Virus record (IMG/VR): IMGVR_UViG_3300042540_001822
Span: 1 to 64,000 of that record
DNA: 64,000 bases
Strand: one strand, 5' to 3'
Shown: in pieces, positions 26,737-46,278 of the stretch
Layout of the letters: the number at the start of each line of letters is the position of its first letter
How positions within the stretch are numbered: the stretch's first letter is position 1
Made by a program: the position numbers and the translations under genes
Notes under the pieces: model-generated
What the model saw: the letters and a program-made list of their open reading frames with translations, nothing else
Told to the model about the DNA's origin: nothing
The model's database searches: none

Positions 26737-26871
26737 TTTATTCTATGGCTTTATGGTTTGGTGTTTGTTTTTACAAATATACAAATAAGTTTCGGGATCT
26801 CCAAATCTTACTTACACAAATACATCATATTCCTGGTGTATAAGTGAAAGAAAACTGGACAAATAAACGAG

Positions 26872-27090
26872 TTATACAACATTTATAAAATCCTCTATCC
26901 GTTGATTAACTCGTTTTATTTTTTCGTGATTTTCGTCTTGATGGTAAATCAATTCTCTTCTACAATATTCTTCGTAATTATGACCACGTTCCGCAACCAT
27001 CCATTTTTCTTTCTTTTCAAGTCTTTCTGTGAGAATTGATTTGATTTGTTTTAAATCACTCAAACTCATTGTTTTAATATTAAGTTCCAT
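26872..27090 (-). CDS. cassette-borne small helical protein
   Basis: Lies within the 10-bp inverted ends 26871/27109. Confidence 0.65.
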   Translation of the reverse strand: MELNIKTMSLSDLKQIKSILTERLEKKEKWMVAERGHNYEEYCRRELIYHQDENHEKIKRVNQRIEDFINVV

Positions 27091-27102
27091 AAAATAAACG
27101 TT

Positions 27103-27196
27103 GTATAACAAGGTATATACGAAATACCCTATTAAGGTTTATACTAAATTTTAAAGTTTGTTGTTAGGGTACTTCGTATATACCCAACCGTTATGT
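27103..27196 (+). mobile_element. attC-like site a
   Basis: TAAC-AA-[20-bp stem with one A.C mismatch]-CAACC-GTTA. Confidence 0.75.
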
Positions 27197-27197
27197 T

Positions 27198-27425
27198 TCA
27201 TTTTAGACGAGCATACCATTTCAATCTATCATCATTACCAATTTCAACTAATTCAAATTTAACTTTACAGTTTTCTAATATTTTCCAAGGATGAAAATTA
27301 AAACTCAACGGGTCTATTGGTAATTCACCATTTCTATTACCTGTTAAATTTGAGTTATCGCATTTCACAACCCAATAAGGTGTTGTGTTGAAATTGGTTG
27401 ATTTAATTAATATTCCTATTTCCAT
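27198..27425 (-). CDS. cassette-associated hypothetical protein
   Basis: Ends next to GTT 27190. Confidence 0.6.
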   Translation of the reverse strand: MEIGILIKSTNFNTTPYWVVKCDNSNLTGNRNGELPIDPLSFNFHPWKILENCKVKFELVEIGNDDRLKWYARLK

Positions 27426-27468
27426 ATTTATTTAAGTTTAAAACGACATTTATCTGTAACCGTTATGT

Positions 27469-27690
27469 TCAAGTTTTTGAAACAGGACTAACCTCCACAA
27501 TTTCAATTTGGGAAGTTTTATTCAACAGTACCCTATTAGAATATTTAGAAATAATAAAATCTCTAATATCATCAACTGTTGAATTTTCGTCAATTCCATC
27601 TTTCTTCCAAAAAGTCATAGTGTAATTTTGATTATTTCTAAATCTATCACCACTTTTAACAGATACGTTTTTTAATTTAACTGATACCAT
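27469..27690 (-). CDS. cassette-associated hypothetical protein
   Basis: Ends next to GTT 27462. Confidence 0.6.
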   Translation of the reverse strand: MVSVKLKNVSVKSGDRFRNNQNYTMTFWKKDGIDENSTVDDIRDFIISKYSNRVLLNKTSQIEIVEVSPVSKT

Positions 27691-27736
27691 ATTTTTTTAA
27701 TTTATAAAACAATAATTTAACTAAATAAAACAAAAA

Positions 27737-27970
27737 TTATGAGTTTTTCAGTTTTCCCCATCTTTTGTTAAATTCTTCATCTGTTTTAAGTTTTTCCAAA
27801 AATTCATCCTCTGAATAGTTTGAAGTTGTTGTTGTCTTAAATGGTAATTCAACCGGTAATTCTCTCACAACTTCCCATTTTCTTTGTTCTTCAGGATTCA
27901 TTTTTTCAAGTTCATCCATATATTGTCTCCATAATGGATTTTCATCTTCTGTATTTAATTTCCAACTCAT
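27737..27970 (-). CDS. hypothetical protein ending in NS*
   Basis: Carries the shared AACTCATAATTTTTG tail. Confidence 0.6.
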   Translation of the reverse strand: MSWKLNTEDENPLWRQYMDELEKMNPEEQRKWEVVRELPVELPFKTTTTSNYSEDEFLEKLKTDEEFNKRWGKLKNS

Positions 27971-28017
27971 AATTTTTTGTTTTTTATATTAATTTGTATA
28001 ATTTTTGTTTTACATAC

Positions 28018-28071
28018 TTATAACAAATGATAGACAACATTAAAACGATTGTTTATCATCGAACGTTATAA
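28018..28071 (+). mobile_element. attC-like site b (54 nt, CATTAAAACGA loop family)
   Basis: ATGATAGACAA/TTGTTTATCAT stem between TAAC and GTTA. Confidence 0.75.
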
Positions 28072-28075
28072 GAAA

Positions 28076-28246
28076 TTATTTTTTAATCACTATTCCATTA
28101 TCTTTACAAAATTTTTGATCAACAATCCATTTGTTTTTATCCCAATCCCAAACATACATTCCATATATTCTACCAGGATAAGTCATAGGTGGAATTTTTG
28201 TAAAAACCCCTTCTAATATTATTTTTTCTTCTTTCTTTTTCCCCAT
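28076..28246 (-). CDS. 56-aa cassette ORF (below the ORF-track cut-off)
   Basis: MGKKKEEKIILEG...VIKK*; inside cassette 28065-28276. Confidence 0.6.
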   Translation of the reverse strand: MGKKKEEKIILEGVFTKIPPMTYPGRIYGMYVWDWDKNKWIVDQKFCKDNGIVIKK

Positions 28247-28316
28247 TTGTGTATATTAAAAATAACTACTTATAACAAAGTGTAAATAAACACGCAAAAC
28301 ATTATGTGCAAGCCTA

Positions 28317-28490
28317 CTATTCCGCTTCGATATGATTATATATTAATTTCATTACCCAAGCATTTTCAAACTCATAGAACCCACAAGTCGAGCAAGCATC
28401 TTCTTCGGTATCATAGTAGATTATTTTACCTTCTTTATTTTTCATAAAGTCCATATTTCTAAGGTCTATGATTACATATTGGTCTTTCAT
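28317..28490 (-). CDS. 57-aa cassette ORF (below the ORF-track cut-off)
   Basis: MKDQYVIIDL...HIEAE*; inside degenerate cassette 28301-28538. Confidence 0.6.
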   Translation of the reverse strand: MKDQYVIIDLRNMDFMKNKEGKIIYYDTEEDACSTCGFYEFENAWVMKLIYNHIEAE

Positions 28491-28637
28491 TTCGTTTTAA
28501 AATTAAATTTAATGATGATAAGCCGCCCAGCACATAAGAGCGGTTTGGCAAGGCTTGTTGGTTGGTTTTATGGGTTTAGGGTGTGGGGTCGGGGAAGGAA
28601 AACTGGACAAATAAACGATTTATGTGTAATAAAAAAA

Positions 28638-28922
28638 TTATTCAGCACTCACAAAATGACTTTTCTTCAATTCAGAAAAAGTTTCAAATCTTTTTTGTTT
28701 ATCGTCAATTGTTAAAAGATAGTAATACTGTTCACCATATTGAAAATGTGCCTTCTTTTCAATTTTAGCATTACCCTTAGTAAAGTTTCCTACTTTTTTA
28801 TGTTCATCTCCCGAAAATATAAAGTCCATATTAATTGTGTATTGATACTCGTCATTAAACCAGTAATACTTGTCAACATTTTTATCATCAAAAAAAGATT
28901 TGAATTTCTTAATTATACCCAT
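28638..28922 (-). CDS. cassette-borne protein with CTS-like N-terminus
   Basis: MGIIKKFKSFF; cassette 28619-28958. Confidence 0.6.
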   Translation of the reverse strand: MGIIKKFKSFFDDKNVDKYYWFNDEYQYTINMDFIFSGDEHKKVGNFTKGNAKIEKKAHFQYGEQYYYLLTIDDKQKRFETFSELKKSHFVSAE

Positions 28923-28963
28923 TTTGTTGTTTTAATTTATTTTTTACATACACATAACAAGGT

Positions 28964-29164
28964 TTAGGTGTATATGTAAAATAAATCCAAGTTTCTATGT
29001 TTCACTCTACAAAACTTACCATCTTTAGTTTCAATTAAGAAACTAATATCACCTCTATCTAAGTTTATCTTTTCTCGAATGTATCCATCAACTAATGATG
29101 TTCCGAGATTGAAACTGATATGTGTCCCAACTTCTAATTCTTTGTTCATTTTACAATCAATCAT
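28964..29164 (-). CDS. hypothetical protein
   Basis: Start set at MIDCKMNKEL. Confidence 0.5.
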   Translation of the reverse strand: MIDCKMNKELEVGTHISFNLGTSLVDGYIREKINLDRGDISFLIETKDGKFCRVKHRNLDLFYIYT

Positions 29165-29214
29165 GTGTATAAATTTTAAGTTACTAAATACAACAACAAA
29201 TATAAGAAATAAAA

Positions 29215-29559
29215 TTAAACGCCAAACCAAGAACCATTGTGTAGATAACACTGATTTATTACCTCACCAGTTTCAGTGTTTTTAATATCGTATCTTGGTT
29301 TATCCTCTGTCAGATAAATTTTCCTATCAAAATAACCTTTAGTGATTATTGAAATATTTTTAATAATATCATATCCCATGTTTTTGTATTCTGAAAAGGT
29401 AATATATCTTTCTTTGCCTATATTACCATCATAAACTAACATCAACGGTTCTTTTGAGTCAACCCATCCTGAAAATTTATCATGTTTGTTGATGATATTA
29501 AAAACATCCATTCCTTTTGTGGTTACTTTTTCACCTAAATTAAATTCTTTCATATTCAT
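29215..29559 (-). CDS. hypothetical protein
   Basis: Start set at MNMKEF; the upstream extension overlaps attC c. Confidence 0.55.
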   Translation of the reverse strand: MNMKEFNLGEKVTTKGMDVFNIINKHDKFSGWVDSKEPLMLVYDGNIGKERYITFSEYKNMGYDIIKNISIITKGYFDRKIYLTEDKPRYDIKNTETGEVINQCYLHNGSWFGV

Positions 29560-29581
29560 ATTTTTGTTTAATTTTACATTC

Positions 29582-29635
29582 ATACAACAAATGATAAAAA
29601 ACATTAAAACGAACACATATTCTTAACCGTTATAA
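29582..29635 (+). mobile_element. attC-like site c (chimeric arms)
   Basis: Left arm resembles b/d, right arm resembles i; joined at the shared loop. Confidence 0.6.
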
Positions 29636-29641
29636 GTAATA

Positions 29642-29761
29642 TTATTTTTGTTCAAGTAATTTAATTAATTCATCATATTCTTGTTGATTTTCTTCTTTTA
29701 TTACTTTTAACATATAACCCATCGGTGTTAGGTATTCTTTCTTTTCTTTCTTCTTTTTCAT
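29642..29761 (-). CDS. 39-aa cassette ORF
   Basis: MKKKKEKKEYLTPMGY...LLEQK*; lies between GTT 29629 and TAAC 29789. Confidence 0.45.
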   Translation of the reverse strand: MKKKKEKKEYLTPMGYMLKVIKEENQQEYDELIKLLEQK

Positions 29762-29794
29762 AATTTTAAATTTTTTAACTAAGTATAACAAAAA

Positions 29795-30277
29795 TTATTG
29801 TTCATCACTCTCAATAACTATATCTTCTGAATCTAAATTTTCAGAAACCAATTCATCAACAACTTGCTCTATTGTCTTTTTATATTCTTCCATCTGTTCT
29901 TTTTCATTAATGTAGTCAATAATCTCATTTAATTTATTTCTAAATTGCGAAAGTTTTTGACCAATTGTTTCTTCTTGAAAATTTGATTCTCTTGATGTTT
30001 TTAATCTTTCTATTTTTTTCATATTGTATAATTTTTGATACTCATCTACAATTAGTTTTATGTTGTATGTGTCTTTGCTAAACTCTGATTTATGAATATA
30101 CCAAGTCAAAAAATCAACTAACAATCCACTAACAACAGGTTCATTCAATTTAATAACCTCGCTTTCTAATATAATTTCAGCAATAGTTGTCATAGCAGCA
30201 TTTTCCTCTTTATTCCACATATCCATTCCATATCCTGTCTTTTCTATGTATTTCTCTATCAAGTAATCTGATGTCAT
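29795..30277 (-). CDS. hypothetical protein
   Basis: 5' leader GTTAGGTTTAGTTAAATTATTG is shared with gene 32456. Confidence 0.6.
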   Translation of the reverse strand: MTSDYLIEKYIEKTGYGMDMWNKEENAAMTTIAEIILESEVIKLNEPVVSGLLVDFLTWYIHKSEFSKDTYNIKLIVDEYQKLYNMKKIERLKTSRESNFQEETIGQKLSQFRNKLNEIIDYINEKEQMEEYKKTIEQVVDELVSENLDSEDIVIESDEQ

Positions 30278-30315: not shown

Positions 30316-30369
30316 ACCTAACAAATGATAAACAACATTAAAACGATTGTTTATCATCGGACGTTAGCG
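30316..30369 (+). mobile_element. attC-like site d (54 nt)
   Basis: Perfect 11-bp stem ATGATAAACAA/TTGTTTATCAT. Confidence 0.8.
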
Positions 30370-30721: not shown

Positions 30722-31018
30722 TCAGTGCTGATTTTTCAAATAATTTGTTGTACATTCTATCCAACACTTTGCTTTATCCGTATTATCCATAAAATCAACT
30801 TTATGAACAAATAAACAAGTAAATTTTTCAGACCATCCCATTGGTAGCCAAAGAGTATTCATGTATCCTTCCAATAATTCCTTATTAGATTTTTCAAATT
30901 TAGTTTCATCTCTTTGTGATAGCCAATCCTCACACATTCTAACTATCGGTTGGAATTCTGGTATTCCAATCACATTTACTATTTTATTCAATATTTTTTC
31001 AGATTCAAATTGATTCAT
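30722..31018 (-). CDS. hypothetical protein
   Basis: Start set at MNQFES; the track extension is an attC half-site. Confidence 0.6.
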   Translation of the reverse strand: MNQFESEKILNKIVNVIGIPEFQPIVRMCEDWLSQRDETKFEKSNKELLEGYMNTLWLPMGWSEKFTCLFVHKVDFMDNTDKAKCWIECTTNYLKNQH

Positions 31019-31061
31019 ATTTTTAAGTTTTGTGGTAAGGTACTTCGCATATGCCCAGCCG

Positions 31062-31280
31062 TTATGCAAAAGGTAGCGGACAACCGTTCGGTATTGTATC
31101 AGCGTCTACAATTTCAACATCCAGTTTTTCACACCAGTGTTTACCCCATCTGTATTCATGATTACCATCATCGTGAATATGATGAGGACATTGCCAACAA
31201 CACTCAACAACCACTACCCTTCGCATAACATTATGTTGCTGCAATGTGGGCTGACCGTTTTCATTTTTACTGTTGTTCAT
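31062..31280 (-). CDS. cassette-derived Cys-rich small protein
   Basis: CCWQCPH...WC...CPLP; cassette 31061-31229. Confidence 0.7.
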   Translation of the reverse strand: MNNSKNENGQPTLQQHNVMRRVVVVECCWQCPHHIHDDGNHEYRWGKHWCEKLDVEIVDADTIPNGCPLPFA

Positions 31281-31321
31281 CTATGTTTCTTGTTTTGTTC
31301 TTTTTACTCAAATTCGTAAAA

Positions 31322-31504
31322 TTACTGTTTTGTGTTTTCTAATTTATTCTCTAATTCCTCCACTTTGTTTCTCCAATATCTCGTAACCGTATATTGTGCT
31401 GAACGAATATAATCGTATGGATGAACATATCCACCCCATCTTAATTTATATTCTTCTTCTTCTAGAGTTTTCTTAGCCTCTTTCAATTCTTCCTCTATGT
31501 TCAT
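31322..31504 (-). CDS. hypothetical coiled-coil protein
   Basis: ORF track. Confidence 0.55.
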   Translation of the reverse strand: MNIEEELKEAKKTLEEEEYKLRWGGYVHPYDYIRSAQYTVTRYWRNKVEELENKLENTKQ

Positions 31505-31511
31505 ATATTCT

Positions 31512-31787
31512 TTAATTTGTATTTTTTAATTTATTCAAAGTAATCACGTTATTTAGTTGCACTTCTTTTAATGTGATTTTTCGTGTATCTTTAAAGTTTT
31601 CGATTACTTCATCCAAATTTTTACTCATGTGTTTATCAAAATCACTTTCAGTTGGGTGGTCTAGATTAGCCTCAAACTCTACCTCAAAACCGTGTTCACT
31701 TAAAAATTTCTTTAATAAGTAAGTTAAACGAGATTTACCAGATGCAACTTGCCCTGATACTGTAATAATTAAATCTTTCTTTTCCAT
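31512..31787 (-). CDS. small P-loop-like protein fragment
   Basis: ITVSGQVASGKS; promoter at 31819. Confidence 0.6.
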   Translation of the reverse strand: MEKKDLIITVSGQVASGKSRLTYLLKKFLSEHGFEVEFEANLDHPTESDFDKHMSKNLDEVIENFKDTRKITLKEVQLNNVITLNKLKNTN

Positions 31788-31928
31788 TTTATTTTTTTAT
31801 AGTTTAGTGTTTGTTTTACAAATATACGAATAAGTTTTCAGATTTCCAAATTTTATCCACACAAATACATCATATTTCTGGTGTATAAGTGAAGAAAAAC
31901 TGGACAAATAAACGAGTTATAAACAATT

Positions 31929-32162
31929 TTAAGAAACATGTTCCCTTGTATTGAGTTCCGTTTTAATTAAACTCAAAAAATCTTTATGTTCATTGTATTT
32001 TTGCTCCATATCTGATTGTGTTGCTCGTGCTTCCCATATCATTTCACCACATCCACAACTGCACCAATACCCGACACCGTAAAATCTTCTACGTTCTGCT
32101 TTGTAAAATCGTAATAGATTTTTTGTATTTAATTTTCTTAATTCTTCGATTGACTTTCCCAT
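31929..32162 (-). CDS. cassette-borne small protein
   Basis: CSCGCG; cassette 31916-32181. Confidence 0.65.
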   Translation of the reverse strand: MGKSIEELRKLNTKNLLRFYKAERRRFYGVGYWCSCGCGEMIWEARATQSDMEQKYNEHKDFLSLIKTELNTREHVS

Positions 32163-32174
32163 AATAAAAACTGT

Positions 32175-32270
32175 TTATAACAAGGTGTATATGTAATTTT
32201 TTTTTACAAAGATATGAATAATTTTTGAAATTTCCAAATAAAAAACTACATATACACCCAACCGTTAGGT
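32175..32270 (+). mobile_element. attC-like site e with a promoter in its loop
   Basis: 17-bp stem (one A.C mismatch); loop holds TTTG-N20-TATCTTTG on the minus strand. Confidence 0.75.
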
Positions 32271-32456
32271 TCAATCATTAATTTGTTTTGATTTTTTTAA
32301 TTCTTCTTCTAACTCTTTTAATTGAATTTCCCAATGTTTCTTAAATTTAATCCAAAATTCATTTCCATTAGGTCCTTCCACCTCAATCTTTTCTCCACAA
32401 AATTTTATTGATGTTTTACAATGTTCAATTTTATCCTCTGTTGTTAAGTAATTCAT
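32271..32456 (-). CDS. cassette-borne small protein
   Basis: Cassette 32264-32504. Confidence 0.6.
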   Translation of the reverse strand: MNYLTTEDKIEHCKTSIKFCGEKIEVEGPNGNEFWIKFKKHWEIQLKELEEELKKSKQIND

Positions 32457-32546
32457 ATTTCTATTTTTTTTAATTTGTAAAACAATAATTTAACTAAACC
32501 TAACATATAAACGAAAACTCGTTTATTTGTCCACTCTTCTAATTAT

Positions 32547-32969
32547 TTAATAACCAAAATCTCCATACAAATCTTGAAAAGATAAATCATTCATAGCACC
32601 TAAATCATTCCAATGTTCAAGATTATTATTCTTTTTTGATTTGTGTTTTGGTGTTGCCCTTTCACTTCTCGATGGCGGTAATGAATTATAAGCATCATCC
32701 CAATATTTTTGCCAAAAATTCAAATCTTCTTTTGATAAGTCTCTTAATTTGATGGTACATTTACTCAAACTTGTTAGAGTTTCTTTTTCTTGTATAGTTG
32801 CTTCGTTTTCATGTAGTTTCCCAACTAAATTTTGAAGCCACCATCCTTTAATTTGATAGTAAGGATGTTTTAGTCCTCTGTTGTCTAATACAGATTTTGG
32901 TATCCAACCATTACCTTCTAGTTTATATGCTTTCTCTGTTTCTTGAATAATATTTAATTTTACTAACAT
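32547..32969 (-). CDS. hypothetical protein
   Basis: ETEKAY...WIPKS N-terminal beta motif. Confidence 0.65.
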   Translation of the reverse strand: MLVKLNIIQETEKAYKLEGNGWIPKSVLDNRGLKHPYYQIKGWWLQNLVGKLHENEATIQEKETLTSLSKCTIKLRDLSKEDLNFWQKYWDDAYNSLPPSRSERATPKHKSKKNNNLEHWNDLGAMNDLSFQDLYGDFGY

Positions 32970-33069
32970 AGTTTAATGTTTAAATTTATTAATTGCCTCT
33001 CTAAAATTTTGTATTTCAATTTAAGTTTAGTTAAACACTACGTTTATACCCAACCGTTAGCGGTAATTG

Positions 33070-33261
33070 TTAAAGTTCTTCTTTTTCCATTTTACCACAC
33101 CTTACACAATATCGTGTTTGGATTGTGCCAACATAAGGATATTGTTGCCCTTGTTTAACTAATAACATATCTATATTTTCTTGTTTCCATTTAGTCCACT
33201 TGTGTCTCCAAAAACAACTACCGTTAACAACGGTTTGGCTAGATTCAGGGGTTGCTTCCAT
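33070..33261 (-). CDS. cassette-derived small Zn-binding protein
   Basis: CFWRHKW...CVRCG; leader SSQTVVNGS; cassette 33056-33228. Confidence 0.7.
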   Translation of the reverse strand: MEATPESSQTVVNGSCFWRHKWTKWKQENIDMLLVKQGQQYPYVGTIQTRYCVRCGKMEKEEL

Positions 33262-33390
33262 AGGTTTAAAGTTTGTTTTTACAAATATACGAATAAGTTT
33301 TCAGATTTCCAAATTTTATCCACACAAATACATCATATTTCTAGTGTATAAGTGAAGAAAAACTGGACAAATAAACGAGTTATCGGAAAT

Positions 33391-33693
33391 TCATTTTTCT
33401 TCCGACTCCTGCTCCGAAGAAGGTTGTTGCTTTTCAAATTCTTCTCTGATTTTAGTTAATCTTGAAAACTCTGCTACCCAAGCATCTAATGTCATTCCAT
33501 TTACTGAAATGTTTTCAAGCCTGTCCCTACCATCACCATCCCAATCAATTACCACTTCTCTACTACTACCCATTTGCCCAAGACTTCGTAGTTTTGAAAA
33601 AAATTCTAATAGTGGCTTTACTGCATCATCTGAGCAGGTAAATGAAATGACATTTTGAAAAGCAATGTTTGGTGTTTTAAATTTTTGTTCCAT
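33391..33693 (-). CDS. cassette-borne protein
   Basis: MGSSR...DWDGDG; cassette 33379-33738. Confidence 0.7.
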   Translation of the reverse strand: MEQKFKTPNIAFQNVISFTCSDDAVKPLLEFFSKLRSLGQMGSSREVVIDWDGDGRDRLENISVNGMTLDAWVAEFSRLTKIREEFEKQQPSSEQESEEK

Positions 33694-33731
33694 TTTAAAT
33701 TAAGTTTATTACCCACGAAAAATGAACTATC

Positions 33732-33827
33732 CGATAACACGGGTTTGGCAAAATGCCACCAAATAGTTTGTGCCAAGATTGAAAGTTCGTGCAAGGTGGC
33801 ACTTCGCCAAGCCCGAAGCCGTTATGT
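33732..33827 (+). mobile_element. attC-like site f
   Basis: CGGGTTTGGCAAAATGCCACC/GGTGGCACTTCGCCAAGCCCG stem, 18 of 21 Watson-Crick pairs. Confidence 0.8.
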
Positions 33828-33834
33828 GTAATTG

Positions 33835-34152
33835 CTACATTCCGTACATTTGAAGAACTATATTCTTTGAACGACATAATTCAGCCCAAGCTTCTTGACA
33901 GTAATTTCTACCGTGTAATGCGTTATTAAATTCGTGACACAATTCAGTTACCAATGATTCAATGTCTTGTGTTAAATCAATTTGTGTTTCGTATTGGTAT
34001 CTTCCACGCAATATTCCATCCTCGTATAAGTGCAATTCACTTTTCGCTCTTGTTTCTAAATCTACATAGAATTGGTCTTTTTCGCTATTGTAGTGCATTG
34101 ATGTAGAAATTCCTTTCTTTGCCAACGCTTTCATTATGTCTTGTATTTCCAT
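33835..34152 (-). CDS. hypothetical protein
   Basis: Promoter at 34179; ends next to GTT 33821. Confidence 0.65.
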   Translation of the reverse strand: MEIQDIMKALAKKGISTSMHYNSEKDQFYVDLETRAKSELHLYEDGILRGRYQYETQIDLTQDIESLVTELCHEFNNALHGRNYCQEAWAELCRSKNIVLQMYGM

Positions 34153-34287
34153 TTTATTTTTGTTTACTGTTTGTTTTACAAATATACAAATAAATTTTTA
34201 GATTTACAAATTTTACCCCCCACAAATACATCATATTCCTGGTGTATAAGTGAAGGGAAACTGGACAAATAAACGAGTTATGTGCCA

Positions 34288-34488
34288 TTAAGAACCATAA
34301 CCGTTTTTAACCATTTTTTGACGAATTTGTTCAGCTATTTCTAACTTTATCTTTTCGTCTTGGTCATATCTTCCAACAAGGAAATTAAATGATTTTAACA
34401 TTGCAGTCCTTAACTCAAGTTGGTCATCATTTGGATATATTTTCCACATATATTCAACAAATTCGGCTTCGGTTTTACATAATTTCAT
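34288..34488 (-). CDS. cassette-borne small protein
   Basis: Cassette 34277-34513. Confidence 0.65.
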   Translation of the reverse strand: MKLCKTEAEFVEYMWKIYPNDDQLELRTAMLKSFNFLVGRYDQDEKIKLEIAEQIRQKMVKNGYGS

Positions 34489-34506
34489 GCTTCAAAAATT
34501 AACGGC

Positions 34507-34597
34507 ACATAACAAGGTATATGTGAAATACCTTATAAAGTTTCTACTAATTTTTAAGTTCGTCTTTAGGTACTTCACATATACCCAACTGTTATAT
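34507..34597 (+). mobile_element. attC-like site g
   Basis: TATATGTGAAATACCT/AGGTACTTCACATATA stem (one A.C mismatch). Confidence 0.8.
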
Positions 34598-34921
34598 TCA
34601 ATTTTCAATTTGTTTTGGAATTTCTACCCATTTATTATCAACCAATTTATATCGTGTTTCATAATCAAATGAAGTCTCGGAAGCATCATTATTAAAATAT
34701 AAAATATTTTCCATATCCCAACTACTTCTATAAAAGGTGTGTTCGTTATTTTCACAATGAATTACAGTGTTTCCGTCCATAACTATCATCGCATTTATAT
34801 GTGTTGAAAATAACTTACCCCCACATATCGGACATTTATGTTCATATTCATTTATATCACACCAATAATCACCCATTCTTTTTTGTTGGTATCTAAACCA
34901 TTCTAATTTTTCTTTTCCCAT
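34598..34921 (-). CDS. Zn-binding hypothetical protein
   Basis: CPICGG. Confidence 0.6.
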   Translation of the reverse strand: MGKEKLEWFRYQQKRMGDYWCDINEYEHKCPICGGKLFSTHINAMIVMDGNTVIHCENNEHTFYRSSWDMENILYFNNDASETSFDYETRYKLVDNKWVEIPKQIEN

Positions 34922-35008
34922 AATTTTATATTTTACTTACACAAATATATCATATTCTTGGTGTATGTGTGAAGGAAACCTGGACAAATAAACGAGTTAG
35001 CAGAAATA

Positions 35009-35278
35009 CTACTGAGCGTTACTAACAGGAATTGCATCTGCATCTAAATTATGGTCGTGTCTTTGCAGTTCAGAAACTAAATAGTTATCTCTAACAGACT
35101 TGTGAAATGGCTCAACATAACCTTCTTTTGCAAAATACCATTCGCCTTGATAGTTAAACTCAAAGCCACTATCTCGCATACAAATTGACATAGTTTCACC
35201 ACTTGCAGTTTTTAAAGTTAAACCGCTAAAAACTTCTTCTAATTGGATACCTAAATCCTCTGTTACTGTTACTTTCAT
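35009..35278 (-). CDS. cassette-borne protein
   Basis: Cassette 34996-35333. Confidence 0.65.
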   Translation of the reverse strand: MKVTVTEDLGIQLEEVFSGLTLKTASGETMSICMRDSGFEFNYQGEWYFAKEGYVEPFHKSVRDNYLVSELQRHDHNLDADAIPVSNAQ

Positions 35279-35326
35279 TTTGTTATTTATTTAAGTTAAA
35301 AATTCGTTTTAATTACACCGTACTTC

Positions 35327-35412
35327 TGCTAACAGCACATAAGCAAAAGCCCAAATCCAACCGCATAATGCCACCGCTATTTGTGCCTTCGCTTATCTGC
35401 AAACCGTTATAA
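35327..35412 (+). mobile_element. attC-like site h
   Basis: GCACATAAGCAAAAGC/GCCTTCGCTTATCTGC stem between TAAC and GTTA. Confidence 0.7.
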
Positions 35413-35427
35413 GTAATGAAACAAAAA

Positions 35428-35619
35428 TTATGAGTTTTCATTTTTCTTACTCCCATCTTCATTCCACTTCCTAAGAAATTCTTGATTTTCAGGTTTTGAA
35501 AGTTCTTCTTTCATCGCATCATCAAATTTCTTTTGCATTTCAAGATTTTGTTCCTCTGTCAGTGTATTCAAATCCTGAAAATCTTCTTTTGTTAATTTAC
35601 TTTTCATATTGTAAATCAT
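35428..35619 (-). CDS. hypothetical protein ending in NS*
   Basis: Shared 3' tail. Confidence 0.6.
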   Translation of the reverse strand: MIYNMKSKLTKEDFQDLNTLTEEQNLEMQKKFDDAMKEELSKPENQEFLRKWNEDGSKKNENS

Positions 35620-35696
35620 ATTGTAAAATTTTTGTTTTAAGTTTTGTGGTAAGGTACTTCACATATACCCAACCGTTATATTCAATATCAAAAATT

Positions 35697-35993
35697 TTAT
35701 GAGTTTTTATATTTTTCAACCCACTCATCATAAGATAGTCTATTTTCTACCAAATATCTTTTAGCAACCTTAGCGTTCCATTCTTTCATTTCTTCAAAAG
35801 TAACTCCTTTTATATACTTACTACAATTCAAATCAAATTTGTAATCTAACCCACCTTCCCACATCACTTCATAAAACACACTATCTTTATCGTGTCCAAT
35901 CGTTCCATTTATCTTATCAGACTGCATATCAACAAAAGCATCAGTTACTCTTTTCATATATGCTTCGTATTCTTTTTGAAATTCTTTTTTCAT
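35697..35993 (-). CDS. cassette-borne protein ending in NS*
   Basis: Cassette 35675-36023. Confidence 0.65.
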   Translation of the reverse strand: MKKEFQKEYEAYMKRVTDAFVDMQSDKINGTIGHDKDSVFYEVMWEGGLDYKFDLNCSKYIKGVTFEEMKEWNAKVAKRYLVENRLSYDEWVEKYKNS

Positions 35994-36035
35994 TTGTATA
36001 AAATTTTTGATACTAAATATAACAAAGAATATGTG

Positions 36036-36617
36036 TCATTGCCTTTCGTTCCAAACTGATTCTGCTTCATCAATAGTGTCAGACCACCAATCAAGTGAAT
36101 GTCCTTTTTGTTTACAATTCACCCTGTAATATTCTGTCATACTATCTCCAAAAGTCTTGTTTTCAATTTCCGTATCCGAACCACAAAAAGGACAAGGCAA
36201 CGCACACACAACAGCAGGTATATTCAATTGTGGGTTCTGTGGTTTATCCGAATTTTGTGTTTCTCTTGATGTGATTTCATTTAGTTCTTTGTATAATCCA
36301 TTATGCCAAGTTTTCATTTTATCTAAACAATCACTAATAACATCATCAATGTTTGTTTTATAAATTGAAACATCTTGTAATTCACCTTCTTTATATTCTT
36401 TTGTTGAAGGTAACATTTCAACAATATTATAAAACAAATCAATTGGTTTATTTTCCCAATTAAAAAAATTACCATCAAACTCACCATAACTTATTCTAAA
36501 TCCGCCACTAAGCAATCCGTGTGCGTATAATTTATAATTAACACCATCTACCATTAACATTTTTGGTAAATCTTTTTCACATCTTAACACGTGGTCTTTT
36601 TCTTCTTGTAATTCCAT
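36036..36617 (-). CDS. fusion of an unknown domain and a Lar-like (restriction alleviation) Zn finger, joined by an attC-derived linker
   Basis: PQLNIPAVVCALPCPFCG...WN; attC left-arm remnant at 36205-36240. Confidence 0.65.
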   Translation of the reverse strand: MELQEEKDHVLRCEKDLPKMLMVDGVNYKLYAHGLLSGGFRISYGEFDGNFFNWENKPIDLFYNIVEMLPSTKEYKEGELQDVSIYKTNIDDVISDCLDKMKTWHNGLYKELNEITSRETQNSDKPQNPQLNIPAVVCALPCPFCGSDTEIENKTFGDSMTEYYRVNCKQKGHSLDWWSDTIDEAESVWNERQ

Positions 36618-36618
36618 T

Positions 36619-36849
36619 TTATTTAGTTTTCAACATTTCTTTATAGGCATTACCTGTGCTAAATTGTTGTTCAAATGTTGGATTTGGATAATGTTCATTT
36701 TGAATCCAATTATCGTGATGTTCAAATGTTCTCCAACCATTATCACGTAATTCTTTTACCATATTCATTAACCCACTTCCAACTTTCATATCAGAAGGAA
36801 TTTCAATACCACCATCAGGTGTTACTTTTACAATAGTTTCTAATTTCAT
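36619..36849 (-). CDS. hypothetical protein
   Basis: ORF track. Confidence 0.6.
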   Translation of the reverse strand: MKLETIVKVTPDGGIEIPSDMKVGSGLMNMVKELRDNGWRTFEHHDNWIQNEHYPNPTFEQQFSTGNAYKEMLKTK

Positions 36850-36910
36850 AATTTATTTTTTTATAAATGAAGGAAAACTGGACAAATAAACGAGTTATAT
36901 TCAATAAAAA

Positions 36911-37090
36911 TTAATTTATGAGTTTATCTACATAATAGTTATCACCACCATAACCGTATTTAATTCTTGCTTGTTCAGCTTCTTCTTTTGTGTTATATGG
37001 TGCTAATATCACACCATTTTTCTCGTTTTGATGTGCTGGTTCTTTTTCATAAACCGCATAATACTCTTTTTTAAGTGCTTCGTATTTCAT
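36911..37090 (-). CDS. 59-aa cassette ORF (below the ORF-track cut-off)
   Basis: MKYEALKKEYY...DKLIN*; cassette 36894-37120. Confidence 0.6.
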   Translation of the reverse strand: MKYEALKKEYYAVYEKEPAHQNEKNGVILAPYNTKEEAEQARIKYGYGGDNYYVDKLIN

Positions 37091-37113: not shown

Positions 37114-37167
37114 ATATAACAAAGAATATGTGTCATTAAAACGAACACATATTCTCAATCGTTAGCG
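37114..37167 (+). mobile_element. attC-like site i (54 nt)
   Basis: Perfect GAATATGTGT/ACACATATTC stem with loop CATTAAAACGA. Confidence 0.8.
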
Positions 37168-37667: not shown

Positions 37668-37736
37668 TTTATTTAGTTTTTAACATTTCGGTGTATGGAT
37701 GAAGAAAAACTGGACAAATAAACGAGTTAGCAACAA

Positions 37737-38409: not shown

Positions 38410-38549
38410 AATTTATATTTTTTAATAAGTTTCATATAACAAGGTGTATGGGAAATTTTTTATCAAATATACATCATATTCCTGATGTATGGATGAAGGA
38501 AACCTGGACAAATAAACGAGTTATAGCCAATACTACCGAAGTACTTCGA

Positions 38550-38978: not shown

Positions 38979-39091
38979 TTTGTTTATGTTTATATAAAAA
39001 TATTTCTATGTTTCTACAAAAATACATCATATTCCTGGTGTATAAGTGAAAGAAAACTGGACAAATAAACGAGTTATAGATAATAAAATAT

Positions 39092-39382: not shown

Positions 39383-39436
39383 ATACAACAAATGAGAAAC
39401 AACATTAAAACGATTGTTTATCACACGACGTTGGCA
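39383..39436 (+). mobile_element. attC-like site j (54 nt)
   Basis: CAAC-AAATGAGAAACAA-CATTAAAACGA-TTGTTTATCACACGAC-GTTGGCA. Confidence 0.7.
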
Positions 39437-40416: not shown

Positions 40417-40671
40417 TTTACTCTGCCCTACTTGACTTCATCTTAGACTTCACCATAGACTCTGCCCTAGACTTCACCATAGACTCTGCCCTAGACTTCA
40501 CCATAGACTCTGCCCTAGACTTCACCATAGACTTCACCATAGACTTCACCATAGACTCTGCCCTAGACTCTGCCCTAGACTTCACCATAGACTCTGCCCT
40601 AGACTTCACCATAGACTCTGCCCTAGACTTCACCATAGACTCTGCCCTAGACTTCACCATAGACTCTGCCC
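40417..40671. repeat. tandem array of two 12-bp units (TAGACTTCACCA x10, TAGACTCTGCCC x9)
   Basis: 19 perfect units at 40444-40671 plus degenerate leading copies. Confidence 0.95.
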
Positions 40672-42967: not shown

Positions 42968-43038
42968 TTTATAAATAATTTTTGGTAATGTAAATATAAG
43001 AAAAGACTTGGAAAGAAAAACCGAATCCCCGTTTTTTT

Positions 43039-44004
43039 CTATTCTGGATATAAACGAGCAAGGGCGCGCATCTCTAGAGAATCCCCGTCCAAAATCTGTT
43101 TTTGAACCCTTTCTTCTGTCGGGAGTTCCTGAGGTTCCACGGTTGGCTCTGCCCAAATAATTTCCCCGCCATTTCTGAGGTCAAAGTAAAGCCTTTTCCC
43201 GATGGATCCTCTTCTGTTTTTTGTGAACTCTAAGAAGGTGATGGATTTGTCCTCCTCGTCAAATCTCATTTCCAGCATGCCGGTCGTGGCGTGCTTTAAA
43301 CGATTGGATCCAAGAAAAACTCCGTCTTTGGTCACCTGTTGGATACACAGAAACGTGGTAAACTTGGACTGGGGGTTTCCTCCCATGTTGTGTTTCTTCA
43401 TAAGATTCACTAACCACTTCTGAGCAACAACAGATGAAATTTTGAGGGACTCCTGAACATATTCTTGAACCTCTACAAAAGAATCAATTAGGACAACATC
43501 GAACCCGAGGTCTAAGGCCTGTTCGAGTATGGTTTGAGGATTGTGGTCTATGAACTCCCCTAAAAACAGAGTTTGCAAAGTTGAGAGTCGAGGGAATCTT
43601 TGAACGTATTTGGCTAGATCTACCCTCGTCATTTCCGCAGAGACGAACAGACATTTGGCACCTTGCTCTGTCAGTGAAGCTAGGGTGTCCATGCCAACAG
43701 TGGATTTGCCAACACCCGGGTCTCCAACAAGAATCCAGTTGGTGGCTTTGGGTACTCCACCCTCCGGGGTGAAAAGGAAATCAAGGGCTGTCTGCGTGAG
43801 GTGATTTTCCCACAGAGAATCTGGAAATGACATAGAACCTAAAGAAAGGATCTCTAGCGCCTTGGCTGGTTTGGGAGATAGGGCAACGTGAGGGCCCTTT
43901 GTATTTACCCGGGCCGCAGCGGCCTTCTTCACAGCCGCAGCTATGCGGGCTTTGGCTTCTTCGGACATTGGTCTGCGTTGTCCTGTGGTGGTTTTTCTAG
44001 GCAT
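43039..44004 (-). CDS. RadA/Sms-like RecA-superfamily ATPase
   Basis: Walker A GDPGVGKST, Walker B VVLIDS, QVTKDG, KNRRG. Confidence 0.8.
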   Translation of the reverse strand: MPRKTTTGQRRPMSEEAKARIAAAVKKAAAARVNTKGPHVALSPKPAKALEILSLGSMSFPDSLWENHLTQTALDFLFTPEGGVPKATNWILVGDPGVGKSTVGMDTLASLTEQGAKCLFVSAEMTRVDLAKYVQRFPRLSTLQTLFLGEFIDHNPQTILEQALDLGFDVVLIDSFVEVQEYVQESLKISSVVAQKWLVNLMKKHNMGGNPQSKFTTFLCIQQVTKDGVFLGSNRLKHATTGMLEMRFDEEDKSITFLEFTKNRRGSIGKRLYFDLRNGGEIIWAEPTVEPQELPTEERVQKQILDGDSLEMRALARLYPE

Positions 44005-44081
44005 GGTTTGGAATTGAAATTTGAAGTAAAAAAAACCACGGGCCGAGAGGAGTGCTGTCTCCTCCCAAGCCCGTGGAGTTG

Positions 44082-44582
44082 TTAGGCTGGCTGAGAATCC
44101 AACCGATTGAGTTCGGTTGGAATTGCTGGGGTGGTTGGGTTGGTGTTGGCGAAGCAGTCATCCCCAAGGCCCCTTTCGATAGATTGGGGATTGGTGAGGG
44201 GAAGGCCACACCGGCAACACCGACCTTCGTGAAGAAGGGAAATTCCCTTGGTGCGAAGAAGGTGTGGATGAGCAACAGCGTTGAGGACGAAGTTGAACAC
44301 CTGGGCGAGTTGGGAGTTGGGGAGAAGATTTTTTGCGGGTTTGTAGGTCATGGTGTCCTGGAAGATGGTCCCCGCAAAAACCATGCCTTGTTCCTTGTCA
44401 CCCAGAAGGGAAATGTTGACAAAGAAAATGGGGAGACGGACCTTGCGGTCTTTTTTGTCCCGGGCCTGCTTCACATGCACTGTGATGTGCTTTTCGGTCG
44501 CAGGGTTGAAGAAGGTGAGGACTGCACGACCTGCAAAGAAGAGGCGTGGGAGGGAGAGGGGGTTGACGTTGGAACGTATCAT
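44082..44582 (-). CDS. DUF6011-type Zn-finger protein
   Basis: CCRCGLPLTNPQSIERGLGDDC; start set at MIRSNV. Confidence 0.75.
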   Translation of the reverse strand: MIRSNVNPLSLPRLFFAGRAVLTFFNPATEKHITVHVKQARDKKDRKVRLPIFFVNISLLGDKEQGMVFAGTIFQDTMTYKPAKNLLPNSQLAQVFNFVLNAVAHPHLLRTKGISLLHEGRCCRCGLPLTNPQSIERGLGDDCFANTNPTTPAIPTELNRLDSQPA

Positions 44583-45070
44583 AGGTGGTTGGTTTATAAT
44601 GTAAAGATACGACATATCCCCGAGGATAAAAAATTAAACCCCGTTTTTTTCCAATTTATTTTTGGTCCAAAATTCCCCGGAGAAAACAAAGAATGCATAC
44701 GCATAAAACCCCGGGGTTTCCCATCCTGGCTTGGCCCAGCCTGGGCAGGCTGGGGCTCGGGCCTTGGCTGGGGATGGATAGGCCTTACCAGGCCAGGCTG
44801 GACCTGAGGTTAATAACCCGACGGTTTGATGTGTTTTATGGTTGGTTTCGTTCGGGGTTTTCGTGTGAAGTGGAAAGGGTATAAGAAGGTAGGATTAATT
44901 TAATGGAAAAAAACATACTCAAAACCTTTACTTTATGGAAAAAATGAATTGAAAATTGCCAATGATGATATTTTGGTGGAATAAAAAAGGCCCTCTTTTA
45001 TCGCGCGCTAAGAGTATGTTAGTGACATACTATGTTTTTGGGGGCCTTACCTATTTAAGCAAATAAGTTT

Positions 45071-45262
45071 TTACAAGGAATGATTATACCCATTAACCAA
45101 TCGTTCTGCAAATTCTTTATCCCTAGTTTTTAGGATAAGGTTTTTTGTTTGTTCTACATGCCCTCTGTGTATCTCATATTCTGTTGGAAATTTGCGTTCC
45201 AACAAAACAAGAGAATCTTTACCTTTAACAAATGCTTGACAGGAATCAGGGTTTGGTTTCAT
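45071..45262 (-). CDS. hypothetical protein
   Basis: ORF track. Confidence 0.55.
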   Translation of the reverse strand: MKPNPDSCQAFVKGKDSLVLLERKFPTEYEIHRGHVEQTKNLILKTRDKEFAERLVNGYNHSL

Positions 45263-45300
45263 GGGTTAGGTGTTACACGAATATACAAGTTATCGGAAAT

Positions 45301-45645
45301 TCATTTTTTTCCCGGATCAGTGTAAAAACAAAGTGTGTGGAATAAACCAAATGAAATTGATTTGAACTCTCTCGAAAAAATGTTGTAAGTGTTGAATAGT
45401 TCTTCAAACTCAAAATACATTTTATGTAGAATTTCATTTGCTTTTTCCCTTTCAATCTTACCTTTCTCTTGTTCAATTCTAACATCTAATGCGTTCCAAG
45501 CCAACGAATATACTCTTGCAATTAGTTTATCTGAAAATACCCCACACAACTGCATATTAGCCAGAAGTTTATTGTGTGCTTCGTAGTTTGGTTGAAGTTT
45601 TTTTAATTCTTTTGGTGGTTCACCAACTTGATAATCTAAGTTCAT
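45301..45645 (-). CDS. hypothetical protein
   Basis: Promoter at 45666; left end GTTATCGGAAATTCATTTTT identical to 33379. Confidence 0.65.
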   Translation of the reverse strand: MNLDYQVGEPPKELKKLQPNYEAHNKLLANMQLCGVFSDKLIARVYSLAWNALDVRIEQEKGKIEREKANEILHKMYFEFEELFNTYNIFSREFKSISFGLFHTLCFYTDPGKK

Positions 45646-45708
45646 ATGTTTAGTGTTTGTTTTTACAAATATACAAATAAATTTCTAAATTTTCAAATCT
45701 TATCTACA

Positions 45709-45948
45709 CTAATATACAAGTTGTAGGTAATGCCTTGAAAACCATTCCTCAAATTTCAATGCTTTGTCAGGAACATCTTTAATATCAGTATCCACACTTC
45801 TATTTTTGTATTGTTCCATATCAAACATTCTACCATTACTCCACGCCTTTCTAAGATGTTCCTTGAAAAAGGCACTACTCATAACAGCAGATATAAGCAA
45901 TTGCTCATCGCTGTTATTAAGTTTTTGTTGTTTATTATCATTCTTCAT
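45709..45948 (-). CDS. cassette-derived protein that starts inside the attC k loop
   Basis: Leader …EQLLISAVMSSA. Confidence 0.65.
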   Translation of the reverse strand: MKNDNKQQKLNNSDEQLLISAVMSSAFFKEHLRKAWSNGRMFDMEQYKNRSVDTDIKDVPDKALKFEEWFSRHYLQLVY

Positions 45949-46008
45949 ATTATCAAATTTTGTCTGTTAATTAAAAGAGCAACTGCTCATATCTGCAAAC
46001 CGTTTTAG
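45879..46008 (+). mobile_element. attC-like site k
   Basis: GCAGATATAAGCAATTGCTC/GAGCAACTGCTCATATCTGC, 18 of 20 pairs with two A.C mismatches; R' degenerate. Confidence 0.7.
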
Positions 46009-46021
46009 CTAATAAAATTTA

Positions 46022-46237
46022 CTACGCCTTTACCCATTTTTTACCATTGTGTTTTAATTCTACAACTTGTTTTAATTTCGTTTGTTCATCGTATGCTTCA
46101 ACATTACTACTGTCTAAAGGGTGTTCACCCCATCTGCTGTAAGTAAGTTGTTGTTCCCACAATTCTCTTGCCTGTTTTTCGTCCTTTGCCATTATTACAA
46201 CTTCTGCTTTAATAATGAATTTTTTAATTGTTTTCAT
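46022..46237 (-). CDS. hypothetical protein
   Basis: ORF track. Confidence 0.55.
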   Translation of the reverse strand: MKTIKKFIIKAEVVIMAKDEKQARELWEQQLTYSRWGEHPLDSSNVEAYDEQTKLKQVVELKHNGKKWVKA

Positions 46238-46278
46238 AATCCGTAAATTTTCAAATCTTACCTACACTAATATACAAG

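What the first reader, a model, noticed from the sequence alone, without database searches (positions are those of the whole stretch)
26774..46278. Multiplied promoter plus attI-like module abutting cassette starts
An element of up to about 55 bp ending ACAAATAAACGA|GTT (11 copies) and a second ending CTAATATACAA|GTT (3 copies) never form hairpins, yet always end at a cassette's GTT. Their ends recall attI1 (…AAAACAAAG|TT). At 26774, 31819, 33282, 34179 and 45666 a leftward TTTG-N20-TATATTTG promoter sits just left of the element, the geometry of Pint relative to attI. Inference: an intI-promoter/attI segment has been copied many times, giving several cassette entry points, each also driving the gene to its left.
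Basis: partly seen in the sequence, partly recalled or inferred. Interest (0 to 1): 0.8.

Follow-up and report, generated by a model that had tools for sequence, protein, structure and literature searches.

The report
Promoter-bearing junction repeat between phage cassettes
A repeat of about 30-140 bases, often carrying a host-type promoter, sits directly after many small gene cassettes in a large freshwater phage and in many other lake phages; it marks where genes get swapped, but it is not a copied integron attI/integrase-promoter segment.

Summary
ACAAATAAACGA|GTT occurs 10 times exactly and once with one mismatch on the + strand (0.47 expected). The element does not fold, and Bacteroidetes-type promoters (TTTG-N19-21-TAnnTTTG) sit at the five coordinates given. 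All genes here are on the minus strand, so the element (E) follows the 3' inverse-core box (N5-TAAC) of a cassette and precedes the next co-directional gene. No integrase was found in the window or next to E in the 66 related loci, and E is absent from 185,579 bacterial and archaeal genomes apart from one chance match. By alignment, E plus promoter derives from the attC-like hairpins of the same array, one of which carries the same promoter in its loop. The second type is E with 43 nt missing. The junction is nevertheless a real recombination joint. There are 61 distinct copies with 32 different cassette boxes. The same gene is followed by E or by various hairpins. Low-GC cassettes end at TAAC|E in 52%-GC phages. 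Exchange points are spread across the module, and lake populations carry deletions between module copies. This fits homologous, PeSL-like shuffling better than a single attI crossover. It is a new variant of known kinds. A true attI-like role is not excluded (about 0.2).

The parts
26466..26528 (-). E copy without promoter (core 26501-26525, AAC/GTT at 26526-28), after the 69-aa gene 26527-26736
26737..26873 (-). E plus promoter module (promoter 26774-26805), after the cassette 26872-27090
28560..28621 (-). Truncated E core (TAAA in place of TAAC) followed by a C-rich leader, as in the 52%-GC phages
31788..31918 (-). E plus promoter module (promoter 31819-31850)
33262..33381 (-). E plus promoter module (promoter 33282-33313)
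34153..34279 (-). E plus promoter module (promoter 34179-34210)
34922..34998 (-). E copy without promoter, directly upstream of gene 34598-34921
36850..36896 (-). Truncated E copy (core only)
37668..37728 (-). Short E copy without promoter
38440..38522 (-). E copy that still ends in a 3' arm plus core box (CCCATACACC-TT-GTTAT), promoter deleted
38979..39075 (-). E copy without promoter
32516..32546 (-). Small hairpin GGACAAATAAACGA-GTTT-TCGTTTATATG followed by G|TTAGG. Its 5' arm is the exact complement of the E core
45646..45722 (-). Type 2 module: AAC-T-TGTATATTAGTGTAG plus promoter 45666-45697, which is type 1 lacking 43 nt
46238..46280 (-). Type 2 module, promoter truncated
45263..45291 (-). 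Type 2 module, short
32179..32266 (-). attC-like hairpin with the same promoter (32207-32238) in its loop; the closest intact relative of the E plus promoter module
27107..27192 (-). attC-like hairpin (ATTN5TAAC, 5 nt, stem ... stem, TT, GTTAN5)
28022..28067 (-). 46-nt hairpin family member
30320..30365 (-). 46-nt hairpin family member
33736..33823 (-). attC-like hairpin
34511..34593 (-). attC-like hairpin
35331..35408 (-). attC-like hairpin
37118..37163 (-). 46-nt hairpin family member
39387..39432 (-). 46-nt hairpin family member (diverged)
45883..46004 (-). attC-like hairpin

Best explanation
The window is the hyperplastic small-gene region of a 219-kb virulent phage of freshwater Bacteroidota.

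Layout. About 40 co-directional ORFan genes are each bracketed by short inverted boxes (GTTA-N5 ... N5-TAAC), like the core and inverse-core boxes of integron cassettes. Between one gene's TAAC and the next gene's GTTA lies one of two interchangeable linkers. One is an imperfect attC-like hairpin. The other is the hairpin-less element E: TAAC|TCGTTTATTTGTCCAGTTTTYYTTCA, then a weak stem, then often a promoter.

Origin (inferred from alignment). E plus promoter derives from a hairpin that carried a host promoter in its loop. It gained about 43 nt after AAC and usually lost the 3' arm and GTTA box.

Function (inferred). (a) The promoter restarts host-RNAP transcription for the next gene or genes. 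(b) The identical 26-140-bp tract, present many times in this genome and in co-infecting phages, acts as a homology patch. The phage's own recombination machinery then swaps, deletes and imports genes at it.

Shown versus inferred. The layout, the pairing of boxes, the many contexts, the spread-out exchange points and the natural deletion variants are shown. Promoter activity and the recombination pathway are inferred.
For: - Genes and layout.
- Hairpins: they are real and asymmetric (5-nt against 1-2-nt spacer, all on the minus strand). They fold with z = -4.3 to -4.5. In the 46-nt family, 7 of 12 stem pairs change on both sides while keeping the pair.
- Boxes: the box upstream of a gene pairs with the box downstream of the same gene. 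13 of 29 pairs match 5/5 against 0.26% in the null, and 0 of 10000 permutations reach this.
- Alignment: E, type 2 and the promoter-loop hairpin 32179-32266 align in one register. Copies at 38440-38522 and in L046 and L036 still end in a 3' arm, TT and GTTAT.
- Promoter: it matches the published Bacteroidetes -33/-7 consensus (PMC6847099).
- Distribution: 101 copies, 61 distinct; 28 carry a promoter, 13 a C-rich leader and 20 something else.
- Shuffling: the same upstream gene is followed by E or by different hairpin arms in 8 clusters. The same downstream gene has different predecessors.
- Exchange points inside the module lie at 0-20, 58-75, 78-105 and beyond 125 nt.
- Lake metagenomes hold variants. 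A 1083-nt deletion between two hairpin arms is seen in two runs. There is a deletion between two promoter copies, and two skips that each remove exactly one ORF.
- Cassette genes are ORFans. Neighbouring genes are for replication and nucleotide metabolism, with no integrase.
Against: - E has no stable stem-loop, so it is not a promoter-terminator unit like a PeSL.
- 33 of 61 copies lack a promoter, so the conserved 26-nt core must have some reason of its own, which this model does not give.
- The left edge is always exactly TAAC, with a near-palindrome (ATAAAC-GA-GTTAT). That fits a site-specific enzyme as well as it fits homology.
- Only 7 informative pairs underlie the exchange-point analysis.
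- The metagenome joints come from short assembled contigs, and some have short sides.
- No transcript data were available.
Confidence: 0.5

Rival explanations
1. E is a double-stranded attI-like target, as the first reader proposed but without the intI origin. An integron-type or other site-specific recombinase, from the phage or the host, would insert folded hairpin cassettes at TAA|C-E. Each E would then be a separate entry point.
For: - The left boundary is sharp at TAAC in 59 of 61 copies, and the junction ATAAAC-GA-GTTAT looks like L and R boxes.
- Cassettes next to E have matching boxes: of 21 E-followed pairs, 11 match 5/5 and 18 at least 4/5.
- 7 of the 10 window hairpins are followed by exactly one gene and then E.
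- One E copy in a 52%-GC phage lineage has five alternative arrangements of low-GC cassettes on one side and conserved genes on the other.
- The break falls exactly at AAC in 8 gene clusters.
Against: - No recombinase was found in the window or beside any copy.
- By the classical rule (crossover on the arm without extra bases), the crossover would be at the GTT side of the hairpin, away from E.
- Cassette genes point toward E rather than away from it.
- The right edge of E is ragged, and exchange points are spread through the module.
- Breaks also occur at |GTT and at ORF ends.
- Loci were fetched by E, so its frequency next to cassettes is biased upward.
Confidence: 0.2
2. The E core is a binding or processing site unrelated to recombination. 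It could be a factor-dependent termination or anti-termination site, an RNA cleavage site, or an operator for a phage regulator of early genes. It would spread only because it is useful downstream of any gene.
For: - The core is the best-conserved part of the module in the 11 window copies.
- It occurs with and without the promoter and in phages of 28-53% GC.
- It is G-poor and unstructured.
- It resembles the -7 box region (TCGTTTATTTGT against TCGTATATTTGT).
Against: - No Rfam family matches it, and there is no terminator-like structure.
- No candidate binding protein was found.
- The idea does not explain why the element always begins at the cassette's TAAC box.
Confidence: 0.15
3. E is only a decayed half of an attC-like hairpin with no present function, multiplied by duplication of neighbouring DNA.
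For: - Many other half-sites exist in the array.
- E's first 14 nt are the exact complement of the 5' arm of the hairpin at 32516-32546.
- No intact palindromic version exists in 2.9 million viral contigs.
Against: - Flanking genes are unrelated between copies, so these are not segmental duplications.
- The core is near-identical in 61 contexts across several phage lineages. Neutral decay would not give that.
Confidence: 0.1

Closest known systems
PeSL (promoter-early stem-loop) mobile regulatory cassettes of T4-type phages (Arbiol et al. 2010, PMC2839356; Comeau et al. 2014, PMC4122927)
   Same: Both are short repeated intergenic motifs carrying a host-type promoter. Both are concentrated in a hyperplastic region of small ORFan genes, and both lie at the break points of insertions, deletions and replacements between related phages. 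Exchange points lie at varying positions inside the motif (for the papers' description).
   Different: The promoter here is of the Bacteroidetes -33/-7 type. E has no stable stem-loop or terminator. The genes carry gene-specific inverted boxes of integron type, which the passages of the PeSL papers that I read do not mention. The same element is shared by phages of 28% and 52% GC.
Clusters of attC sites lacking an integrase (CALIN) in virulent phages (Qi et al. 2023, PMC9892861)
   Same: This is also an array of co-directional small genes separated by imperfect hairpins flanked by ...AAC / GTT... boxes, in a virulent phage with no integrase nearby. A Bacteroidota phage (Polaribacter P12002L) is among the published cases.
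   Different: Here there are 10 full hairpins plus 14 hairpin-less modules in 20 kb. The asymmetry is a 5-nt against 1-2-nt spacer rather than extrahelical bases in the stem. The boxes are TAAC/GTTA plus N5, not RYYYAAC/GTTRRRY. Promoters sit inside the linkers. Recognition by an integron integrase is untested.
Integron attI site with Pint (class 1 paradigm)
   Same: A non-hairpin sequence ends at G|TT next to a cassette box, with an imperfect inverted repeat around the junction and a promoter pointing away from that cassette.
   Different: There is no intI. There are many copies rather than one. The element lies at the 3' end of cassettes that are transcribed toward it. It is homologous to the array's own hairpins and is not found in bacterial genomes.

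Membership tests
integron attI | Lies between an integron integrase gene and the first cassette | tested here: not met
   No tyrosine recombinase among 30 window ORFs of 150 aa or more or among 37 large ORFs in flanking loci. The other 155 kb of the contig could not be read.
integron attI | Single site at the promoter-proximal (5') end of the array, with cassette genes reading away from it | tested here: not met
   11 + 3 copies. The adjacent cassette gene reads toward the element, which follows its 3' TAAC box.
integron attI | Double-stranded simple site: imperfect inverted L and R boxes with crossover at G|TT of GTTRRRY | tested here: inconclusive
   ATAAAC-GA-G|TTAT-N5 is present in all copies. 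It resembles attI1 only as I recall that site, and the crossover position is unknown.
integron attI | Recombines with folded attC under IntI | not testable with these tools
   Needs an attC x attI-type conjugation assay.
integron attC / cassette array (CALIN) | Imperfect palindrome that folds as a single strand | tested here: met
   Met for the 10 hairpin sites: z = -4.3 to -4.5 for three of four folded, compensatory changes in 7 of 12 pairs. Not met for E itself: z = -1.0 to +0.5.
integron attC / cassette array (CALIN) | The box at the 5' end of a cassette is complementary to the inverse box at its own 3' end | tested here: met
   13 of 29 pairs match 5/5 and 22 of 29 at least 4/5; null 0.26%; 0 of 10000 permutations.
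integron attC / cassette array (CALIN) | R''/R' consensus RYYYAAC/GTTRRRY and extrahelical bases that mark the bottom strand | tested here: inconclusive
   Only TAAC/GTTA is shared. The asymmetry is a 5-nt against 1-2-nt spacer, always the same way round. IntegronFinder and HattCI were not available.
integron attC / cassette array (CALIN) | The hairpin travels with the upstream gene, with the crossover only at G|TT | tested here: not met
   In 8 clusters the same upstream gene is followed by different arms or by E, with the break at AAC. Breaks at |GTT also occur.
PeSL-type mobile regulatory cassette | Repeated intergenic motif with a host primary-sigma promoter consensus | tested here: met
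   6 of 15 modules in the window (5 of the 14 hairpin-less modules plus the promoter-loop hairpin) and 28 of 61 distinct copies overall. Promoter activity was not measured.
PeSL-type mobile regulatory cassette | Adjacent stable stem-loop acting as a terminator | tested here: not met
   E folds like shuffled sequence, and there is no terminator-like site at any copy.
PeSL-type mobile regulatory cassette | Sits in an ORFan-rich hyperplastic region and at indel and replacement break points between relatives | tested here: met

The most novel reading that the evidence does not exclude
E is a true double-strand recombination site of a phage cassette system. An unidentified recombinase would insert hairpin-bearing cassettes at TAA|C-E on the opposite side from classical integrons. 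A virulent phage would then carry a dozen independent, promoter-equipped capture sites, and unrelated phages of one lake community would share one cassette pool through the same site.
Probability: 0.18. Interest if true: 0.85.

Novelty: new variant of a known kind. Interest (0 to 1): 0.55.

Why it matters
It joins two ideas that have so far been described separately: integron-like cassettes in virulent phages, and promoter-bearing repeats that shuffle ORFan genes. It does so in uncultured freshwater Bacteroidota phages, including relatives of the 460-640-kb huge phages. One 26-nt junction sequence links at least 45 different genes across phages of 28-53% GC. It therefore gives a handle, usable as a PCR or capture primer site, for sampling the mobile small-gene pool of a phage community. 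Those genes probably include anti-defence functions; one cassette is Lar-like. It also offers a concrete test of whether such shuffling is site-specific or homologous.

Tried and rejected
- Intact palindromic ancestor of E (E arm, loop of 3-64 nt, complementary arm): none in viral contigs.
- E in bacterial or archaeal genomes, as an integron attI would be: one chance hit inside an Anabaena ORF.
- Near matches in cultured phages: none. Only three uncultured huge phages share hairpin or leader modules.
- Homology of the two genes that share a 3' end (33391-33693 and 45301-45645): only the last ~30 nt and the junction are shared.
- E as an intrinsic terminator or E. coli-type promoter: no enrichment and no site at E.
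- Rfam: only tRNAs.
- RNA evidence: the one 'RNA' run is probably DNA, and all but one of the runs are kept only as contigs.
- Several read laying joints between E copies (31921->34224, 34281->36869) have sides under 30 nt. I treated them as repeat artefacts.
- Deciding from the hairpin asymmetry which side (AAC or GTT) is the crossover: the structure differs from classical attC, so the rule cannot be carried over. Empirically both sides are break points.
- One alignment row (L046) and one row were given on the wrong strand and were ignored.
Full report
**Observation.** The 15-mer ACAAATAAACGAGTT occurs 10 times exactly on the + strand between 26514 and 39075, and once more with one mismatch at 28607. 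Only 0.47 matches are expected by chance. One exact copy lies on the - strand at 32516-32530. The second motif has three copies at 45278, 45709 and 46267. That count is not significant alone. The repeat finder extends the first element to 49-139 nt in register. Six copies folded as single-stranded DNA score z = -1.0 to +0.5 against shuffles, so the element does not form a hairpin. Neighbouring hairpin sites score z = -4.3 to -4.5. The motif TTTG-N18-21-TAnnTTTG occurs on the minus strand at 26774, 31819, 33282, 34179 and 45666, exactly as reported. It also occurs at 32207 and 29197, giving 9 matches against 3.9 expected. This is the published -33/-7 consensus of the Bacteroidetes primary sigma factor (PMC6847099). 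E. coli-type promoters and intrinsic terminators are not enriched, and none coincides with the element.

**Context.** The window is part of IMG/VR contig 3300042540_001822, which is 219 kb long. It carries phage genes: a lysozyme, a methyltransferase, a DnaB/KaiC-like ATPase and PHROG families. It has no close relative among deposited phages. Only three uncultured huge phages of 462-642 kb share short linker modules. Between 24 and 48 kb every plausible gene is on the minus strand, and most encode 45-190 aa. Of 40 such ORFs, one is Lar-like and three hit any PHROG. None of the 30 ORFs of 150 aa or more that I scanned is a tyrosine recombinase.

**The array around the element.** Read on the gene strand, ten intergenic regions hold imperfect hairpins of one design: ATT-N5-TAAC, a 5-nt spacer, stem, loop, stem, a 1-2-nt spacer, then GTTA-N5. 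All are the same way round. Many more occur in related loci, and seven stand in tandem in the 462-kb phage LR756500. In the 46-nt family, ten distinct sequences keep all pairs. Seven of the 12 stem pairs change on both sides, and the loop TCGTTTTAATG stays fixed. The N5 after GTTA upstream of a gene is complementary to the N5 before TAAC downstream of the same gene. 13 of 29 distinct pairs match 5/5 and 22 match at least 4/5. The null rate is 0.26%, and 0 of 10000 permutations reach the observed count. That is the hallmark of integron cassettes. Arrays of this kind without an integrase (CALIN) have been reported in virulent phages, including a Polaribacter phage (PMC9892861).

**Anatomy of the element (E).** On the gene strand it reads: stop codon ... 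ATT-N5-TAAC | TCGTTTATTTGTCCAGTTTTYYTTCA - CACTTATACACC-AGRAATATGA-TGTATTTGTGTGG. In five copies there follows TTTG-N20-TATATTTG, a leader and ATG. E therefore follows the 3' box of a cassette and takes the place of a hairpin. It precedes the next co-directional gene.

Alignment A5 puts three things in one register: type 1, type 2 and the hairpin 32179-32266, whose loop holds the same promoter. The stretch GATGTATTTGTGTGG of E corresponds to the 5' arm of that hairpin. Type 2 is type 1 without the 43 nt that follow AAC. The copy at 38440-38522 and copies in L046 and L036 still end in a 3' arm, TT and GTTAT. The - strand copy at 32516-32546 is a small hairpin whose 5' arm is the exact complement of the E core. 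No intact palindromic version of E exists in 2.9 million viral contigs. The first 12 nt of the core resemble the -7 region of the promoter (TCGTTTATTTGT against TCGTATATTTGT).

**Distribution.** The core was found in 27 viral and 39 metagenome loci, all from lake or freshwater samples as far as the run records say. There are 101 copies, 61 of them distinct over 130 nt. They show at least 45 upstream contexts and 32 different N5 boxes. TAAC precedes the core in 59 of 61 copies. 28 copies continue with a promoter, 13 with a C-rich leader and 20 otherwise. The first 14-22 nt were fixed by the search, so their conservation across loci is partly built in. Within the window, where no such bias applies, the core is the best-conserved part.

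Twenty loci belong to phages of about 52% GC. There, a segment of 270-740 nt with 31-41% GC holds one or two small genes in five alternative arrangements. It ends exactly at TAAC|E, and homology between strains resumes at position -4. In 185,579 bacterial and archaeal genomes the 22-mer has one hit, inside an Anabaena coding sequence with unrelated flanks. Thirty-seven large ORFs next to E in other loci are genes for replication, nucleotide metabolism and virion parts. No integrase family is among the 25 of 37 matched Pfam families that the tool listed.

**Where recombination has happened.**
- The same upstream gene is followed, right after AAC, by E in one contig and by a different hairpin arm in another. 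This is seen in 8 clusters. One example is the 73-aa gene at 27469-27690 compared with L014.
- The same downstream gene has different predecessors, with the break at |GTT. So neither side alone is the crossover.
- Among promoter-type copies that share one flank but not the other, the switch falls at 0-20, 58-75, 78-105 or beyond 125 nt from the junction. Only 7 pairs were informative.
- Contigs from other lake metagenomes laid on 31001-37000 show several variants. A 1083-nt deletion between two homologous hairpin arms (34551->35635) appears in two runs. A deletion lies between two promoter copies (32202->34226). Two skips each remove exactly one ORF (34293->34491 and 35700->35992). One rearrangement joins 31059 to 34588 at the AAC box.
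- I discounted joints with sides under 30 nt between E copies.

The junction really is a cassette boundary, and different cassettes do abut the same copy in relatives. The first half is met: the element is unrelated to any intI-proximal sequence that I could find. In addition, the polarity is wrong for attI. The cassette is transcribed toward E, and by the classical rule the crossover would be on the other arm of the hairpin. E is also homologous to the array's own hairpins, and exchange points are not fixed. 'Pint geometry' reduces to an ordinary promoter between two co-directional genes.

**Most likely mechanism (confidence about 0.5).** E plus promoter is a hairpin-less derivative of a promoter-carrying attC-like linker. 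It restarts transcription for the next gene, which is inferred from the consensus only. As an identical tract present many times and in many co-infecting phages, it also serves as a homology patch for the shuffling, loss and import of ORFan cassettes. This is what PeSLs do in T4-type phages (PMC2839356; PMC4122927). What this leaves unexplained is why the promoter-less 26-nt core is kept and why it always starts at TAAC.

**Rivals.**
- A true attI-like site for an unknown recombinase (about 0.2).
- A regulatory or processing site (about 0.15).
- Neutral decay of a hairpin half (about 0.1).

**Limits.** 155 kb of the contig could not be read. No attC-specific model or transcript data were available. 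Loci were collected by exact match to E. All but one of the metagenome runs used are assembled contigs, not reads.

Noticed in passing
window 49995-54436, minus strand: Rfam finds four more tRNA-like matches of 87-132 nt (50202-50333, 54341-54436, 50001-50098, 52321-52407). ARAGORN does not call them; it calls only tRNA-Met at 49619-49693. Their length suggests tRNA genes with insertions or introns, or degenerate copies.
   Followed up: no
window 40434-40671: A 12-nt tandem repeat (GACTTCACCATA, about 19 copies, also periodic at 48 nt) fills the 80-aa ORF 40418-40660. It lies at the edge of a higher-GC island (40-46 kb, GC 0.39-0.43) that interrupts the low-GC cassette array.
   Followed up: partly
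window 41583, 42989, 44600, 48395, 48919, 52246 (minus strand): A second upstream motif, CTTATMTTTACA, gives 7 matches with up to 1 mismatch against 1.5 expected. Three of its copies (41583, 42989, 48395) lie about 25-35 nt before an ATG, downstream of a G/C-rich hairpin with a T run. It may be a different promoter class, perhaps phage middle or late, for the higher-GC block.
   Followed up: partly
L068 (LR756500.1 positions about 400.3-403.7 kb): The 462-kb uncultured huge phage carries seven tandem hairpin cassettes of the same design, with matching boxes and very short inter-hairpin genes (150-250 nt). No E element lies within 40 kb.
   Followed up: partly
L004 about 6838-7070 on its minus strand (the same in L007 and L043): A 62-aa ORF starts inside the loop of a 125-nt hairpin and reads through the hairpin's 3' arm and GTTA box into the next unit. 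Coding sequence and linker therefore overlap.
   Followed up: no
L018, L008, L002, L022 (52%-GC phages), just downstream of E: A C-rich leader plus the first codons (CCCCTAACCC ATG AAA CCA ACC CC, giving MKPTP...) is repeated in front of several unrelated genes, including a conserved zinc-ribbon ORF of about 50 aa right after E. A degenerate copy follows the truncated E at window 28560-28593.
   Followed up: partly
window 36036-36617, minus strand: This 193-aa cassette protein has a C-terminal Lar-like restriction-alleviation domain (Pfam E = 9.5e-5, below the curated cutoff; phrog_599 E = 2.6e-6). It is the only cassette with a functional hint, a possible anti-restriction gene.
   Followed up: no
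window 29567-29648, minus strand: A chimeric linker: the 5' arm comes from one 46-nt hairpin variant (AGAATATGTGT) and the 3' arm from another (TTATCAT). They are joined in the shared loop TCGTTTTAATG, which looks like recombination inside the loop.
   Followed up: no
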